This document shows positions 637 to 3,626 of a DNA stretch of 64,000 nt, in pieces (within the stretch, counting starts at the first letter, position 1; each line of letters starts with the position of its first letter). The DNA lies in the NCBI RefSeq assembly GCF_006345805.1, contig NC_043024.1, positions 19,654,001 through 19,718,000 on the forward strand, given 5' to 3'. The position numbers and the translations under genes were made by a program. Below the pieces are notes generated by a model. It ran no database searches. It worked only from the letters and a program-made list of their open reading frames with translations, and was not told where the DNA came from. Origin of the DNA: Octopus sinensis (lineage: Eukaryota).

Positions 637-882
637 CCAGGATTGGAGATATTTCTATGTAAAGAGTAAATATTATCAGGAATTATATAAAAAAATTCAA
701 TATTTTGTTCCATTGTGGAAGTAGAACCTGTTTATTGCTCATAAATTTTAGCAACATCTTATGTGGACCCTTCCCCCCACCCCGAGTCATATAGACCCCA
801 GTTGAGAGCCACTGTACGATAGGCACACGCCCTGAAATTTTTGTGAAAGGAGTAACAAAATTACATCAACTGAAGTATTTTA

Positions 883-2722
883 CCTATCTATCCGCCCAGT
901 CAAAGTCAACTCTCGGTTACTCGTTGGATCAGTGTCCTCCAGTCAGTTCTATCCTGGGCCGCTTCTTTCAGATTAGCTATGTCCATTCCGGTATCACTCT
1001 TGATGGTGTCAAGCCAGCGGGTTCTTGGTCGGCCTCTTCCTCTCTTGCCACTGACCATTCCGTATATATATATATATCTATCCGCCCAGTCAAAGTCGAC
1101 TCTCGGTTACTCGTTGGATCAGTGTCCTCCAGTCAGTTCTATCCTGGGCCGCTTCTTTCAGATTAGCTATGTCCATTCCGGTATCACTCTTGATGGTGTC
1201 AAGCCAGCGGGTTCTTGGTCGGCCTCTTCCTCTCTTGCCACTGACCATTCCGTATATATATATATATCTATCCGCCCAGTCAAAGTCGACTCTCGTTACT
1301 CGTTGGATCAGTGTCCTCCAGTCAGTTCTATCCTGGGCCGCTTCTTTCAGATTAGCTATGTCCATTCCGGTATCACTCTTGATGGTGTCAAGCCAGCGGG
1401 TTCTTGGTCGGCCTCTCCTCTCTTGCCACTGACCATTCCGTATATATATATATATCTATCCGCCCAGTCAAAGTCGACTCTCGGTTACTCGTGGATCAGT
1501 GTCCTCCAGTCAGTTCTATCCTGGGCCGCTTCTTTCAGTTTAGCTATGTCCATTCCGGTATCACTCTTGATGGTGTCAAGCCAGGGGTTCTTGGTCGGCC
1601 TCTTCCTCTCTTGCCACTGACCATTCCGTATATATATATATATCTATCCGCCCAGTCAAAGTCGACTCTCGGTTACTCGTTGGATCAGTGTCCTCCGGTC
1701 AGTTCTATCCTGGGCCGCTTCTTTCAGTTTAGCTATGTCCATTCCGTATCACTCTTGATGGTGTCAAGCCAGCGGGTTCTTGGTCGGCTCTTCCTCTCTT
1801 GCCACTGACCATTCCGTATATATATATATATATCTATCCGCCCAGTCAAAGTCGACTCTCGGTTACTCTTGGATCAGTGTCCTCCAGTCAGTTCTATCCT
1901 GGGCCGCTTCTTTCAGATTAGCTATGTCCATTCCGGTATCACTCTTGATGGTGTCAAGCCAGGGGTTCTTGGTCGGCCTCTTCCTCTCTTGCCACTGACC
2001 ATTCCGTATATATATATATATCTATCCGCCCAGTCAAAGTCGACTCTCGGTTACTCGTTGGATCAGTGTCCTCCAGTCAGTTCTATCCTGGGCCGCTTCT
2101 TTCAGTTTAGCTATGTCCATTCCGGTATCACTCTTGATGGTGTCAAGCCAGCGGGTCTTGGTCGGCCTCTTCCTCTCTTGCCACTGACCATTCCGTATAT
2201 ATATATATATCTATCCGCCCAGTCAAAGTCGACTCTCGGTTACTCGTTGGATCAGTGTCCTCCGGTCAGTTCTATCCTGGGCCGCTCTTTCAGATTAGCT
2301 ATGTCCATTCGGTATCACTCTTGATGGTGTCAAGCCAGTGGGTTCTTGGTCGGCCTCTTCCTCTCTTGCCACTGACCATTCCGTATATATATATATATCT
2401 ATCCGCCCAGTCAAAGTCGACTCTCGGTTACTCGTTGGATCAGTGTCCTCCAGTCAGTTCTATCCTGGGCCGCTTCTTTCAGTTTAGCTATGTCCATTCC
2501 GGTATCACTCTTGATGGTGTCAAGCCAGCGGGTTCTTGGTCGGCCTCTTCCTCTCTTGCCACTGACCATTCCGAGCATGATGTCCTTCTCCAGGGATTTT
2601 CTCCGCATAATATGACCGAAATATGCCAATCTATGCTTGGTGATCCCAACTTCTAGCGACAGTTTTGGCTTGATCTGGTTAAGAACTTCTCCATTGGTGA
2701 GCCTCGCTGTCCATGGAATCCA
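883..2722 (-). mobile_element. 5'-truncated RTE/BovB-type LINE whose terminal ~189 bp is repeated 9 times head-to-tail
   Basis: Minus strand encodes WIPWTARLTNGEVLNQIKPKLSLEVGITKHRLAYFGHIMRRKSLEKDIMLGMVSGKRGRGRPRTRWLDTIKSDTGMDIAKLKEAAQDRTDWRTLIQRVTESRL*, which I recognise as the RTE/BovB ORF C-terminus. 10-bp TSD AAGTATTTTA at 873-882 and 2723-2732. Confidence 0.9.
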
Positions 2723-3626
2723 AAGTATTTTATTGATAATTATTTCATTAGGTGTGGGAGTGGCTGTGTGGTAAGTAGCTTGCTTACAAACCACATGGTT
2801 CCGGGTTCAGTCCCACTGCGTGGAACCTTGGGTAAGTGTCTTCTACTATAGCCTCGGGCCGACCAAAGCCTTGTGAGTGGATTATGTGTAGACGGAAACT
2901 GAAAGAAGCCCGTCGTATATATATGTATCTATATATATATATGTGTGTATGTGCGTGTTTGTCTGTGTTTGATCCCCCAACATCGCATGACAACCGATGC
3001 TGGTGTGTTTACGTCCCCGTCACTTAGCGGTTCGGCAAAAAAGAGACCGATAAAATAAGTACTAGGCTTACAAAGAATTATTCCTGGTGTTGATTTGATC
3101 GACTAAAGGCGGTGCTCCAGCATGGCCACAGTCACATGACTGAAACAAGTAAAAGAGTAAAAGAGTATTAGATCCGAAATGGTGAAAGGCAAAACTGACT
3201 TCCATGGAATTCAAACTCAGAATGTAAAGTTGGAAGAAATGCTCCTAAGCATCTTGTCTGGCATGCAACCAATTCTACCCAGCACACCATCGTAGAATTT
3301 ACCAATATGAAAAGAAACTAATTAGTTTTACTAATGTTCAAAGTTTTGGCGATAAAGAATAATCATTAGAGTTCTGAAAAGAAATCTATGGAACTAGATT
3401 TATGGTTCCATGTTATTCTCAGAGTTCTCAATCTCTCTAAAATGTAGACATCTGTGAATATTGATCGATTTAGACTATTAGAAAATAATTAATTTCGATC
3501 GTGTTCAAAGGTTTGATGACAAAATTATATATGTTTGTGATTTATTAACAGTACTAATGAATGTCTCATTAAGGAAATCAATGTACTGTAATGCTTTATG
3601 AGTTTGATTGCGTTTAATTATTTCAG

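What the first reader, a model, noticed from the sequence alone, without database searches (positions are those of the whole stretch)
873..2732. Nine head-to-tail copies of an RTE/BovB-type LINE 3' end inside a single TSD
Seen: a ~189-bp unit (last ~53 codons, short 3' UTR and a (TA)n tail) repeats 9 times with periods of 188-190. The last copy continues into ~150 bp more of LINE body, and one 10-bp TSD (AAGTATTTTA) brackets everything. All eight junctions use the same breakpoint, and the TA count is almost invariant (7,7,7,7,8,7,7,7). Diagnostic variants (GATTAG/GTTTAG, CCAGTC/CCGGTC) are shuffled among copies. Inference: one founder duplication was amplified, either by rolling reverse transcription on a circular 3'-end RNA or by rapid post-insertion unequal exchange; this would be a LINE-derived satellite at birth. 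Single-base gaps between copies may be read errors.
Basis: partly seen in the sequence, partly recalled or inferred. Interest (0 to 1): 0.75.

Follow-up and report, generated by a model that had tools for sequence, protein, structure and literature searches.

The report
Nine-copy tandem array of a LINE tail
One truncated insertion of an RTE-type jumping gene has had its last 190 bases multiplied to nine head-to-tail copies, a tidy but ordinary example of how mobile-element fragments turn into tandem repeats.

Summary
On the minus strand, one 5'-truncated RTE-type LINE sits between two copies of a 10-bp target-site duplication (TSD). That 10-mer occurs nowhere else in the 64-kb window. The last 175 nt of the LINE plus an A(TA)7 tract (190 nt in all) are present nine times. 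All eight junctions are the same apart from one (TA)8.

The 11 length differences between copies are all single-base deletions. All lie in the six interior copies, which suggests unpolished long-read consensus errors.

My best reading has two steps:
- One reverse-transcriptase template switch during insertion made a founder "tail-to-internal" dimer. This explains a full microsatellite tail in the junctions, a short ATAGG at the outermost copy, and no target-site copy in the junctions.
- Unequal exchange or replication slippage then expanded the dimer to nine copies. This explains the uniform junctions and the mosaic of shared variants.

The circular-RNA idea found no support. No ribozyme matches the array, and the base pair before the unit is CT, not a splice acceptor AG.

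I could not exclude a source element that already carried the array, a single-event concatemer, or a wrong assembled copy number. No same-species data were reachable.

Two of 80 related RTE loci carry comparable 3'-end dimers. Tail-to-internal LINE tandems are already described. This is a new member of a known kind, of modest interest.

The parts
873..882 (.). Target-site duplication, copy next to the element's 3' end (AAGTATTTTA)
   Evidence: Exact 10-mer present only here and at 2723-2732 in the whole window.
883..887 (-). Short terminal tail of the outermost (3'-most) copy: ATAGG on the minus strand (CCTAT on the plus strand). There is no (TA)7 here.
   Evidence: Read directly. It differs from the eight internal tails.
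888..1062 (-). Unit c1 (3'-most), 175 nt, no deletions. It has a private C-to-T change at a CpG (unit position 155) that shortens the ORF to ...RVTES*.
1063..1077 (-). Junction tract A(TA)7 between c2 and c1. The same 15-nt tract lies at 1253-1267, 1441-1455, 1629-1643, 2007-2021, 2196-2210 and 2384-2398. The tract at 1817-1833 is 17 nt, (TA)8.
1078..2383 (-). Units c2-c8: 1078-1252, 1268-1440, 1456-1628, 1644-1816, 1834-2006, 2022-2195 and 2211-2383. Each holds the last 53 codons, GMVSGKRGRGRPRTRWLDTIKSDTGMDIA(N/K)LKEAAQDRTD(W/R)RTLIQRVTESRL*. Units c3-c8 carry 1-2 single-base deletions each.
2399..2573 (-). Unit c9 (5'-most), 175 nt, no deletions, continuous with the LINE body. The TGA stop is at 2411-2413 and the ancestral TAG stop at 2399-2401.
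   Evidence: Relatives end ...ESRTRLNG* at the position of the TAG.
2574..2722 (-). 149 nt of unique LINE body upstream of the repeated part (WIPWTARLTNGEVLNQIKPKLSLEVGITKHRLAYFGHIMRRKSLEKDIML...). Its upper end is the 5'-truncation point of the insertion.
   Evidence: The open frame is continuous with c9. Homology to relatives starts at IPWTAR, within 3 nt of the TSD.
2723..2732 (.). Target-site duplication, copy next to the element's truncated 5' end (AAGTATTTTA)

Best explanation
An RTE-type LINE on the minus strand inserted once by target-primed reverse transcription. It was 5'-truncated about 324 nt from its 3' end and made one 10-bp TSD.

Step 1, the founder dimer. During that insertion the reverse transcriptase copied the last 175 nt. 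It then switched once onto the 3' end of a second (or the same) LINE RNA. There it copied the complete A(UA)7 microsatellite tail and carried on for another 324 nt. The result was a tail-to-internal dimer inside a single TSD.

Step 2, expansion. The dimer later grew to nine copies at the DNA level, by out-of-register (unequal) sister-chromatid or homologue exchange, or by replication slippage. The founder junction was copied each time, and variants were shuffled between copies.

What is shown: the anatomy, the TSD, the identical junctions, the variant mosaic and the LINE identity. What is inferred: the template switch and the mode of expansion.

The array has no evident function. Every copy carries a premature TGA stop and no copy has a promoter or enzymatic domain.
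For: 1. There is one insertion. A perfect 10-bp TSD abuts both LINE ends and is unique in the window. LINE homology begins within 3 nt of it.
2. The junctions contain no copy of the target site. The units therefore did not arrive as separate insertions at this site.
3. The internal junctions carry a full 15-nt A(TA)7 tract straight after the ancestral stop codon TAG. The outermost copy has only ATAGG. A simple DNA duplication of an ATAGG-tailed monomer could not supply (TA)7. A switch onto the free 3' end of an RNA with a microsatellite tail could.
4. [quoted passage not shown]
   - Relatives have (ATCAA)n, (ATTGG)n and (CTA)n tails.
   - The octopus element RTE-2_OV is described the same way (PMC9115989).
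5. The related R2 protein jumps from finished cDNA onto new 3'-UTR RNA molecules. In cells it gives head-to-tail tandem transgene repeats (PMC11371274).
6. Two of 80 loci of related RTEs carry the same kind of dimer.
   - L045 has 161 bp x2, joined exactly at the last bases before the tail.
   - L004 has tail-to-internal copies with a period of about 617 bp.
7. The eight junctions are identical, with no variable extra bases. That fits copying of one founder junction better than eight separate jumps.
8. Variants are shared by non-adjacent copies, and all four haplotypes of positions 91 and 122 occur. The C at position 122 destroys a Trp that is invariant in relatives (W91), so it is derived, yet it sits on both position-91 backgrounds. 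This requires DNA-level exchange or conversion within the array.
9. The two-step model (a small tandem forms, then unequal exchange expands it) and tail-to-internal junctions of non-LTR elements are documented in Drosophila (PMC5932611).
10. The array looks young. Substitutions are few: 4 variable sites, 8 of about 1575 unit-core bases differing from the consensus. CpG observed/expected is 0.77, against 0.52 for the rest of the window.
Against: - No other copy of this LINE family was available: none in the window and none in any searchable collection. The family's native tail, (TA)n or ATAGG/(ATAG)n, is therefore unknown, and evidence point 3 depends on it.
- The GG between the tail remnant and the TSD is unexplained.
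- There is no microhomology at the switch point. The native context is GCT|CGGAATGG and the tail ends in A.
- Interior copies are poorly polished, so some 'shared variants' could be consensus artefacts. That would weaken the exchange argument. The T/A difference between the clean edge copies (c1 and c2 against c9) is probably real.
- Seven of eight (TA) tracts are identical. This argues for very recent amplification but does not say by which route.
- The related dimers L004 and L045 stayed at two copies.
Confidence: 0.5

Rival explanations
1. The array was inherited. The source element, or its transcript, already carried tandem copies of its 3' end. This locus is an ordinary 5'-truncated retrocopy of that RNA. 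Amplification happened earlier and elsewhere, or is a trait of a subfamily.
For: - A single TSD around everything, and a 5' truncation in unique body upstream of the array, are exactly what such a retrocopy would look like.
- All nine units share the premature TGA stop.
- Shared variants would simply be inherited.
- Other repeat families in this window occur at several loci with variable internal copy number: a 184-bp unit at 1-3 copies and a 66-bp unit at 1-7 copies. Mobile units that carry arrays therefore seem common in this genome.
Against: - No second copy of the array or of the LINE lies in 64 kb.
- None of 80 related loci has more than two 3'-end copies.
- An element with nine equivalent 3' recognition modules would be expected to prime at internal modules and yield copies of varying number. 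That cannot be tested here.
- It only moves the question of origin to another locus.
Confidence: 0.2
2. The whole nine-copy concatemer was made in a single retrotransposition event. Either the reverse transcriptase jumped repeatedly from the 5' end of an abundant ~190-nt 3'-terminal RNA fragment to the 3' end of the next one, or it ran round a circular 190-nt RNA. A final switch onto longer LINE RNA then supplied the 149-nt body.
For: - The junctions have the form 'complete 3' end with tail, then 5' end of the next template'. This is what end-to-end template jumping gives. R2 protein does this repeatedly in vitro and gives head-to-tail repeats in cells (PMC11371274).
- The TA count is almost invariant.
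- The array lies inside one TSD.
Against: - Nothing marks CGGAATGG as an RNA 5' end. No hammerhead, HDV-like or other ribozyme matches at E<=10. There is no tRNA-like promoter and no special fold (z = -0.56). The upstream dinucleotide is CT, so no canonical back-splice acceptor exists.
- The 190-nt unit is not an abundant dispersed element in this window.
- Eight jumps without a single variable extra nucleotide would be unusual.
- On one circular template, shared variants cannot arise.
- With several templates, four haplotypes would be needed, including a Trp-to-Arg defect on two backgrounds.
Confidence: 0.15
3. The array is real but the assembled copy number and the between-copy 'variants' are partly assembly artefacts. 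The cause would be expansion, collapse or mis-polishing of a near-identical tandem repeat.
For: - There are 11 single-base deletions and no insertions. Eight are in two-base runs and three are lone bases within a CpG.
- All 11 lie in the six interior copies, while the three copies nearest unique flanks are clean (P about 0.012). This is the signature of long-read consensus that short reads could not polish.
Against: - A 1.9-kb array is easily spanned by single long reads, so the count should be close to right.
- The clean edge copies already show the junction, the tail difference, the TSD and a real T/A difference between copies.
Confidence: 0.1

Closest known systems
Tail-to-internal tandems of non-LTR retrotransposons as seeds of satellites (McGurk & Barbash 2018, PMC5932611)
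   Same: [quoted passage not shown] The proposed route is two-step: a small tandem forms first, then unequal exchange expands it.
   Different: Their double-insertion model predicts a copy of the target site inside the junction, and often different truncation points. Here the junction holds only A(TA)7, all truncation points are the same, and one TSD encloses everything. The founder is better explained by a template switch within a single insertion.
Template jumping by R2-type reverse transcriptases, with head-to-tail transgene repeats in the PRINT system (PMC11371274)
   Same: cDNA synthesis continues from one RNA template onto the 3' end of another. The products join a full 3' end to the start of the next copy.
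   Different: That work is in vitro or in engineered cells, with a different LINE clade (R2), and the jump occurs at true RNA 5' ends. Here the switch point lies inside the coding sequence. Only one switch is needed if DNA-level expansion followed.
RTE clade LINEs (RTE/BovB-like), for example octopus RTE-2_OV (PMC9115989)
   Same: The C-terminal ORF motifs match (GRPRTRWLD...DRxxWR...ESR.RL). [quoted passage not shown] A TSD is present.
   Different: Only the last 103 codons are present here, with a premature TGA stop. The species and subfamily are unknown. The 3' end is multiplied nine times, which is not a described feature of the clade.
Metazoan retrozymes: tandem 170-400-bp repeats that encode hammerhead ribozymes and circular RNAs (recalled from Cervera & de la Pena; not read here)
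   Same: A short unit of about 190 bp repeated head to tail, and a proposed circular-RNA intermediate.
   Different: No hammerhead or other ribozyme motif is present in the unit. The unit is plain LINE coding sequence plus tail.

Membership tests
RTE-clade (BovB-like) non-LTR retrotransposon | C-terminal end of the ORF homologous to RTE-type elements | tested here: met
   The 103-aa query hits 6 proteins at 51-74% identity and 453 metagenome stretches at about 50%. Invariant residues include YFGH, P62, T64, R65, W66, R88 and W91. Termite-gut relatives continue into the BovB-like ...GNG.PL...LENP... segment. That resemblance is recalled from memory.
RTE-clade (BovB-like) non-LTR retrotransposon | A single ORF with an apurinic-type endonuclease followed by reverse transcriptase | tested here: inconclusive
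   This cannot be seen in the window, because the copy is truncated to 324 nt. In relative L001 the same C-terminus follows genes with Exo_endo_phos (faint) and RVT_1 hits.
RTE-clade (BovB-like) non-LTR retrotransposon | Very short 3' UTR ending in a short tandem repeat instead of poly(A) | tested here: met
   The ancestral stop TAG is followed directly by A(TA)7, or by ATAGG at the outermost copy. Relatives have (ATCAA)n, (ATTGG)n and (CTA)n. The literature states the same for RTE (PMC9115989).
RTE-clade (BovB-like) non-LTR retrotransposon | RT-domain phylogeny places the element in the RTE clade | not testable with these tools
   The RT domain is absent from this truncated copy, and no full-length copy from the same species could be retrieved.
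Double-insertion TE tandem (McGurk & Barbash) | Junction between an intact 3' end and a 5'-truncated neighbour | tested here: met
   All eight junctions read ...GGATAG-A(TA)n | CGGAATGG....
Double-insertion TE tandem (McGurk & Barbash) | A copy of the target site preserved inside the tandem junction | tested here: not met
   The junctions contain only the 15-17-nt TA tract. AAGTATTTTA occurs only at the two outer boundaries.
Ribozyme-bearing circular-RNA repeats (retrozyme-like) | A self-cleaving ribozyme motif in each unit | tested here: not met
   An Rfam 15 scan of 700-3200, both strands, at E<=10 gave no hit inside 873-2732.
Back-spliced circular RNA as template | An AG acceptor immediately upstream of the circle's first base in the linear source | tested here: not met
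   The native context is ...CATCATGCT|CGGAATGG. The donor side lies in the unknown source locus and cannot be tested.
Satellite DNA | Long arrays and/or many arrays of the same monomer in the genome | tested here: not met
   There are nine copies (1.7 kb) at one locus and no other copy in the 64-kb window. The genome-wide status is not testable here.

The most novel reading that the evidence does not exclude
An RTE reverse transcriptase built the whole nine-unit concatemer in vivo in a single target-primed event. It would have done so by processive end-to-end template jumping on, or rolling round, a discrete ~190-nt 3'-terminal RNA. A LINE enzyme could then create a ready-made tandem array (a proto-satellite) in one step, and possibly at many loci.
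Probability: 0.15. Interest if true: 0.65.

Novelty: new member of a known kind. Interest (0 to 1): 0.3.

Why it matters
The first step by which a dispersed mobile element becomes a tandem array is rarely caught in a form that can still be read. Here one perfect TSD, identical junctions, and a tail that differs between the internal and the outermost copies record that history.

With population and genome-wide data, this locus could separate tandem formation driven by reverse transcriptase from formation driven by recombination, for RTE elements in an invertebrate genome.

By itself it adds an example to an established picture (TE-derived tandem repeats, tail-to-internal LINE tandems) rather than changing it.

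It also carries a practical warning. Deletion-only 'variants' confined to interior repeat copies flag unpolished assembly.

Tried and rejected
- Other copies of the LINE or the unit in the window: blastn found only TA-tract matches.
- Same-species copies elsewhere, all negative.
  - The protein word search gave only 6 hits, the best at 74% identity.
  - Exact look-up of 10 ORF variants among about 15 billion proteins found none.
  - The junction pattern gave no match in metagenome contigs.
  - 3'-end patterns gave no match in viral or prokaryotic genome contigs.
  - The decisive 'many loci or one locus' test could therefore not be run.
- Pfam on the 103-aa C-terminus: no family.
- Paralogous empty site: the joined flanks do not match across the insertion point anywhere in the window. 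The neighbouring SINE starts 17-25 bp to the right of the TSD.
- Ribozyme or known structured RNA in the unit: none.
- Stable fold of the unit RNA: z = -0.56.
- tRNA-like promoter: none.
- The bacterial promoter/terminator scan is irrelevant to a eukaryotic LINE and gave nothing.
- The repeat of CGGAATGG inside the unit (positions 1-8 and 73-80) was judged a chance match. Both encode Gly-Met, and about 0.2 such 8-mer repeats are expected in 175 nt.
- A three-unit higher-order repeat (c4-c6 against c7-c9) fits position 122 but fails at position 91.
- Double insertion at the same target site was rejected because no target copy lies in the junctions.
- Species: the abundant tRNA-like SINE and the TA/TG microsatellites reminded me of cephalopod genomes. 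I could not test this and do not rely on it.
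Full report
**1. What is there**

Tandem Repeats Finder reports one array at window 885-2573. It has period 189, 8.9 copies, 97% matches and score 3227, by far the strongest long-period repeat in the window.

Exact anchors place nine units on the plus strand at 888, 1078, 1268, 1456, 1644, 1834, 2022, 2211 and 2399. The element reads on the minus strand.

In that orientation each unit is 175 nt, running from CGGAATGG to GGGCGGATAG. 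In eight cases it is followed by A(TA)7, and once by A(TA)8. The undamaged period is therefore 190. The periods of 188 and 189 come from single-base deletions.

The 5'-most unit (c9, 2399-2573) continues without a break into 149 nt of further LINE sequence (2574-2722).

The 10-mer AAGTATTTTA lies directly outside both ends, at 873-882 and 2723-2732. It occurs nowhere else on either strand of the 64-kb window, and its per-position probability from base composition is 4.8e-6.

**2. What the sequence is**

The minus strand from 2722 encodes WIPWTARLTNGEVLNQIKPKLSLEVGITKHRLAYFGHIMRRKSLEKDIMLGMVSGKRGRGRPRTRWLDTIKSDTGMDIAKLKEAAQDRTDWRTLIQRVTESRL*LGG*.

- Pfam has no model for this region.
- The protein search finds six relatives at 51-74% identity.
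- A pattern-plus-tblastn scan of metagenome contigs finds 453 encoding stretches. The best 80 were kept, at about 50% identity, many with contig names from the same few samples.
- In relative L001 the same C-terminus follows genes with endonuclease (faint) and RVT_1 hits.

Relatives end ...ESRTRLNG* or ...ESRTRLKG*, and a short tandem repeat follows the stop codon at once:

| Relative | Tail |
|---|---|
| L001 | (ATCAA)n |
| L004 | (ATTGG)n |
| L045 | (CTA)n |

Codon-for-codon alignment shows that our TGA corresponds to their CGA (Arg). Our TAG in GGATAG corresponds to their stop. The 12-nt '3' UTR' is therefore the old end of the ORF. All nine units share a premature stop, and the tail begins right after the ancestral stop.

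This is the RTE pattern. [quoted passage not shown]

The 3'-terminal nucleotide motif of the relatives (TCGGACACGACTGA) turns up in the paper library only in studies of cattle, sheep or goats, and deer. That fits my recollection that it is the BovB 3' end. I accept 'RTE/BovB-type' at clade level. The RT-domain phylogeny cannot be done on this fragment.

**3. Differences between copies**

Substitutions occur at four sites.

- Unit position 91 is T in c1, c2, c3, c6 and c8, and A in c4, c5, c7 and c9.
- Position 122 is C in c5 and c8. This turns a Trp that is invariant in all relatives into Arg, so C is the derived state.
- Position 45 has a private G-to-A change in c8.
- Position 155 has a private C-to-T change in c1.
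- Both private changes are at CpG sites.
- All four combinations of positions 91 and 122 are present.

There are also 11 single-base deletions and no insertions. Eight are in two-base runs and three remove a lone base of a CpG.

The per-copy deletion counts for c1..c9 are 0,0,2,2,2,2,1,2,0. The three copies nearest unique sequence are clean, and all deletions lie in the interior six (P about 0.012 if placed at random). Eleven deletions against four substitution events is not how sequences normally diverge.

The pattern is what an unpolished long-read consensus looks like where short reads cannot be placed. I therefore treat the deletions as probable errors and the interior substitutions with some caution. 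The T/A difference between the clean copies c1/c2 and c9 should be real.

**4. Age**

The units differ from their consensus at 8 of about 1575 bases. The TSD is perfect. CpG observed/expected in the insertion is 0.77, against 0.52 for the rest of the window and 0.58 for the SINE copies. The insertion and its amplification look recent.

**5. Clues to the mechanism**

(a) The junctions hold no copy of the target site. Repeated insertion at the same site is the double-insertion route shown for Drosophila elements (PMC5932611). It does not fit here. That paper does establish two things: most non-LTR tandem junctions join an intact 3' end to a 5'-truncated neighbour, as seen here, and small tandems then grow by unequal exchange.

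(b) The internal tails are 15 nt, A(TA)7, but the outermost copy ends ATAGG directly against the TSD.
- If a monomer with an ATAGG tail had simply been duplicated at the DNA level, the junction could contain at most ATA. The extra six TA units would have had to grow from almost nothing before amplification.
- A reverse transcriptase that switches onto the free 3' end of another LINE RNA would copy that RNA's whole microsatellite tail into the junction. The first priming event at the chromosomal nick commonly captures only part of a tail.
- Template jumping of this kind is documented for R2 protein. It yields multi-template cDNAs in vitro and head-to-tail tandem repeats in cells (PMC11371274).

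(c) Two of the 80 related loci show the same architecture at two copies.
- L045 has a 161-bp 3'-end duplication. Its first copy stops at the last four bases before the (CTA)n tail and rejoins upstream at an AGGA microhomology.
- L004 has a complete 3' end with an (ATYGG)3 tail, followed at once by a 5'-truncated copy. The period is about 617 bp and identity 91-93%.

Tail-to-internal dimers are therefore recurrent in this clade.

(d) The eight junctions are identical, with no variable extra bases. That points to copying of one founder junction rather than eight independent jumps.

(e) The derived Trp-to-Arg change sits in two non-adjacent copies on different position-91 backgrounds. This requires exchange or conversion between copies at the DNA level. 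The same process is sufficient to change copy number.

**6. The circular-RNA idea**

- An Rfam scan of 700-3200 at E<=10 finds no hammerhead, HDV-like, twister or any other family inside the array.
- The unit RNA folds no better than shuffled sequence (z = -0.56).
- There is no tRNA-like module.
- The native dinucleotide before the unit is CT, not AG.
- The model also needs an extra switch from the circle onto linear LINE RNA to explain the 149-nt body.
- It cannot produce shared variants without later exchange.

It is not excluded, but nothing supports it.

**7. What I could not do**

No other copy of this LINE family could be reached.

- There is none in the window.
- There is no close protein in the word-indexed collection.
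- There was no exact match for ten ORF variants.
- There was no junction match in metagenome contigs.
- There were no 3'-end matches in viral or prokaryotic contigs.

So the family's native tail is unknown. The test of 'same junction at other loci?' was not possible. That test separates local amplification from an array inherited from a source element.

That rival is real. A retrocopy of an element that already carried the array would look identical here. Other repeat families in this window do occur at several loci with variable internal copy number.

**8. Verdict**

Estimated likelihoods:

| Explanation | Confidence |
|---|---|
| One 5'-truncated RTE insertion; founder dimer from one template switch during insertion; DNA-level expansion to nine copies | about 0.5 |
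| Inherited from a source element that already carried the array | about 0.2 |
| Single-event concatemer (serial jumps or rolling circle) | about 0.15 |
| Materially wrong assembled copy number | about 0.1 |

The phenomenon belongs to a known kind: TE-derived tandem repeats and tail-to-internal LINE tandems. The locus is a clean specimen, worth a look if long reads and population data exist, but it would not surprise a specialist.

Noticed in passing
window 2750-3170 and about 35 further places (for example 42222-42593, 59832-60212, 30466-30833): A SINE-like repeat of about 380 bp is extremely abundant. There are 35 blastn hits in 64 kb at a mean identity of 87%, and one copy starts 17-25 bp to the right of the LINE's TSD. 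ARAGORN does not call its head as a tRNA.
   Followed up: partly
window 11693-12060, 12472-12653, 14894-15076, 27725-28282, 54539-54718: A 184-bp unit occurs as a singleton at some loci and as 2-3 tandem copies at others (85-89% identity). It behaves like a dispersed element with variable internal copy number.
   Followed up: partly
window 17160-17620, 11277-11402, 45109-45237, 56102-56166: A 66-bp GC-rich unit occurs as 7, 2, 2 and 1 copies at four loci, in both orientations. At 11264-12063 it lies next to the 184-bp array, which suggests a composite element.
   Followed up: partly
window 20468-20884, 33562-34214, 34549-35180, 60854-61778: Very long trinucleotide arrays: (ATG) about 138 copies, (CTT) about 222, (ATA) about 211 and (GTG) about 309. 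Many (TA)n and (TG)n tracts occur throughout the window.
   Followed up: no
window 1268-2383 (array interior): All 11 single-base deletions lie in the six interior copies and none in the three copies nearest unique flanks. This probably marks an unpolished long-read consensus, and the same may apply to other near-identical repeats in this assembly.
   Followed up: yes
L045 3257-3582 and L004 1-772: Related RTE elements from metagenome contigs carry head-to-tail dimers of their 3' ends. L045 has 161 bp x2 joined at AGGA just before the (CTA)n tail. L004 has a period of about 617 bp, with the (ATYGG)n tail followed directly by a 5'-truncated copy.
   Followed up: yes
L030 2618-2947, L063 1512-2026, L069 194-610, L005 780-978: Several related RTE loci carry 60-68-bp tandem arrays. 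In L030 and L063 the array lies just upstream of the C-terminal coding region, and in L069 about 750 bp upstream. In L005 it lies inside the 3' region (65 bp x3.1). The ~67-bp arrays might belong to one composite element.
   Followed up: no
window 2399-2413 and every unit: All nine units share a TGA where relatives have CGA (Arg), four codons before the ancestral TAG. The source copy, or the insertion before it was amplified, was therefore already slightly defective.
   Followed up: yes
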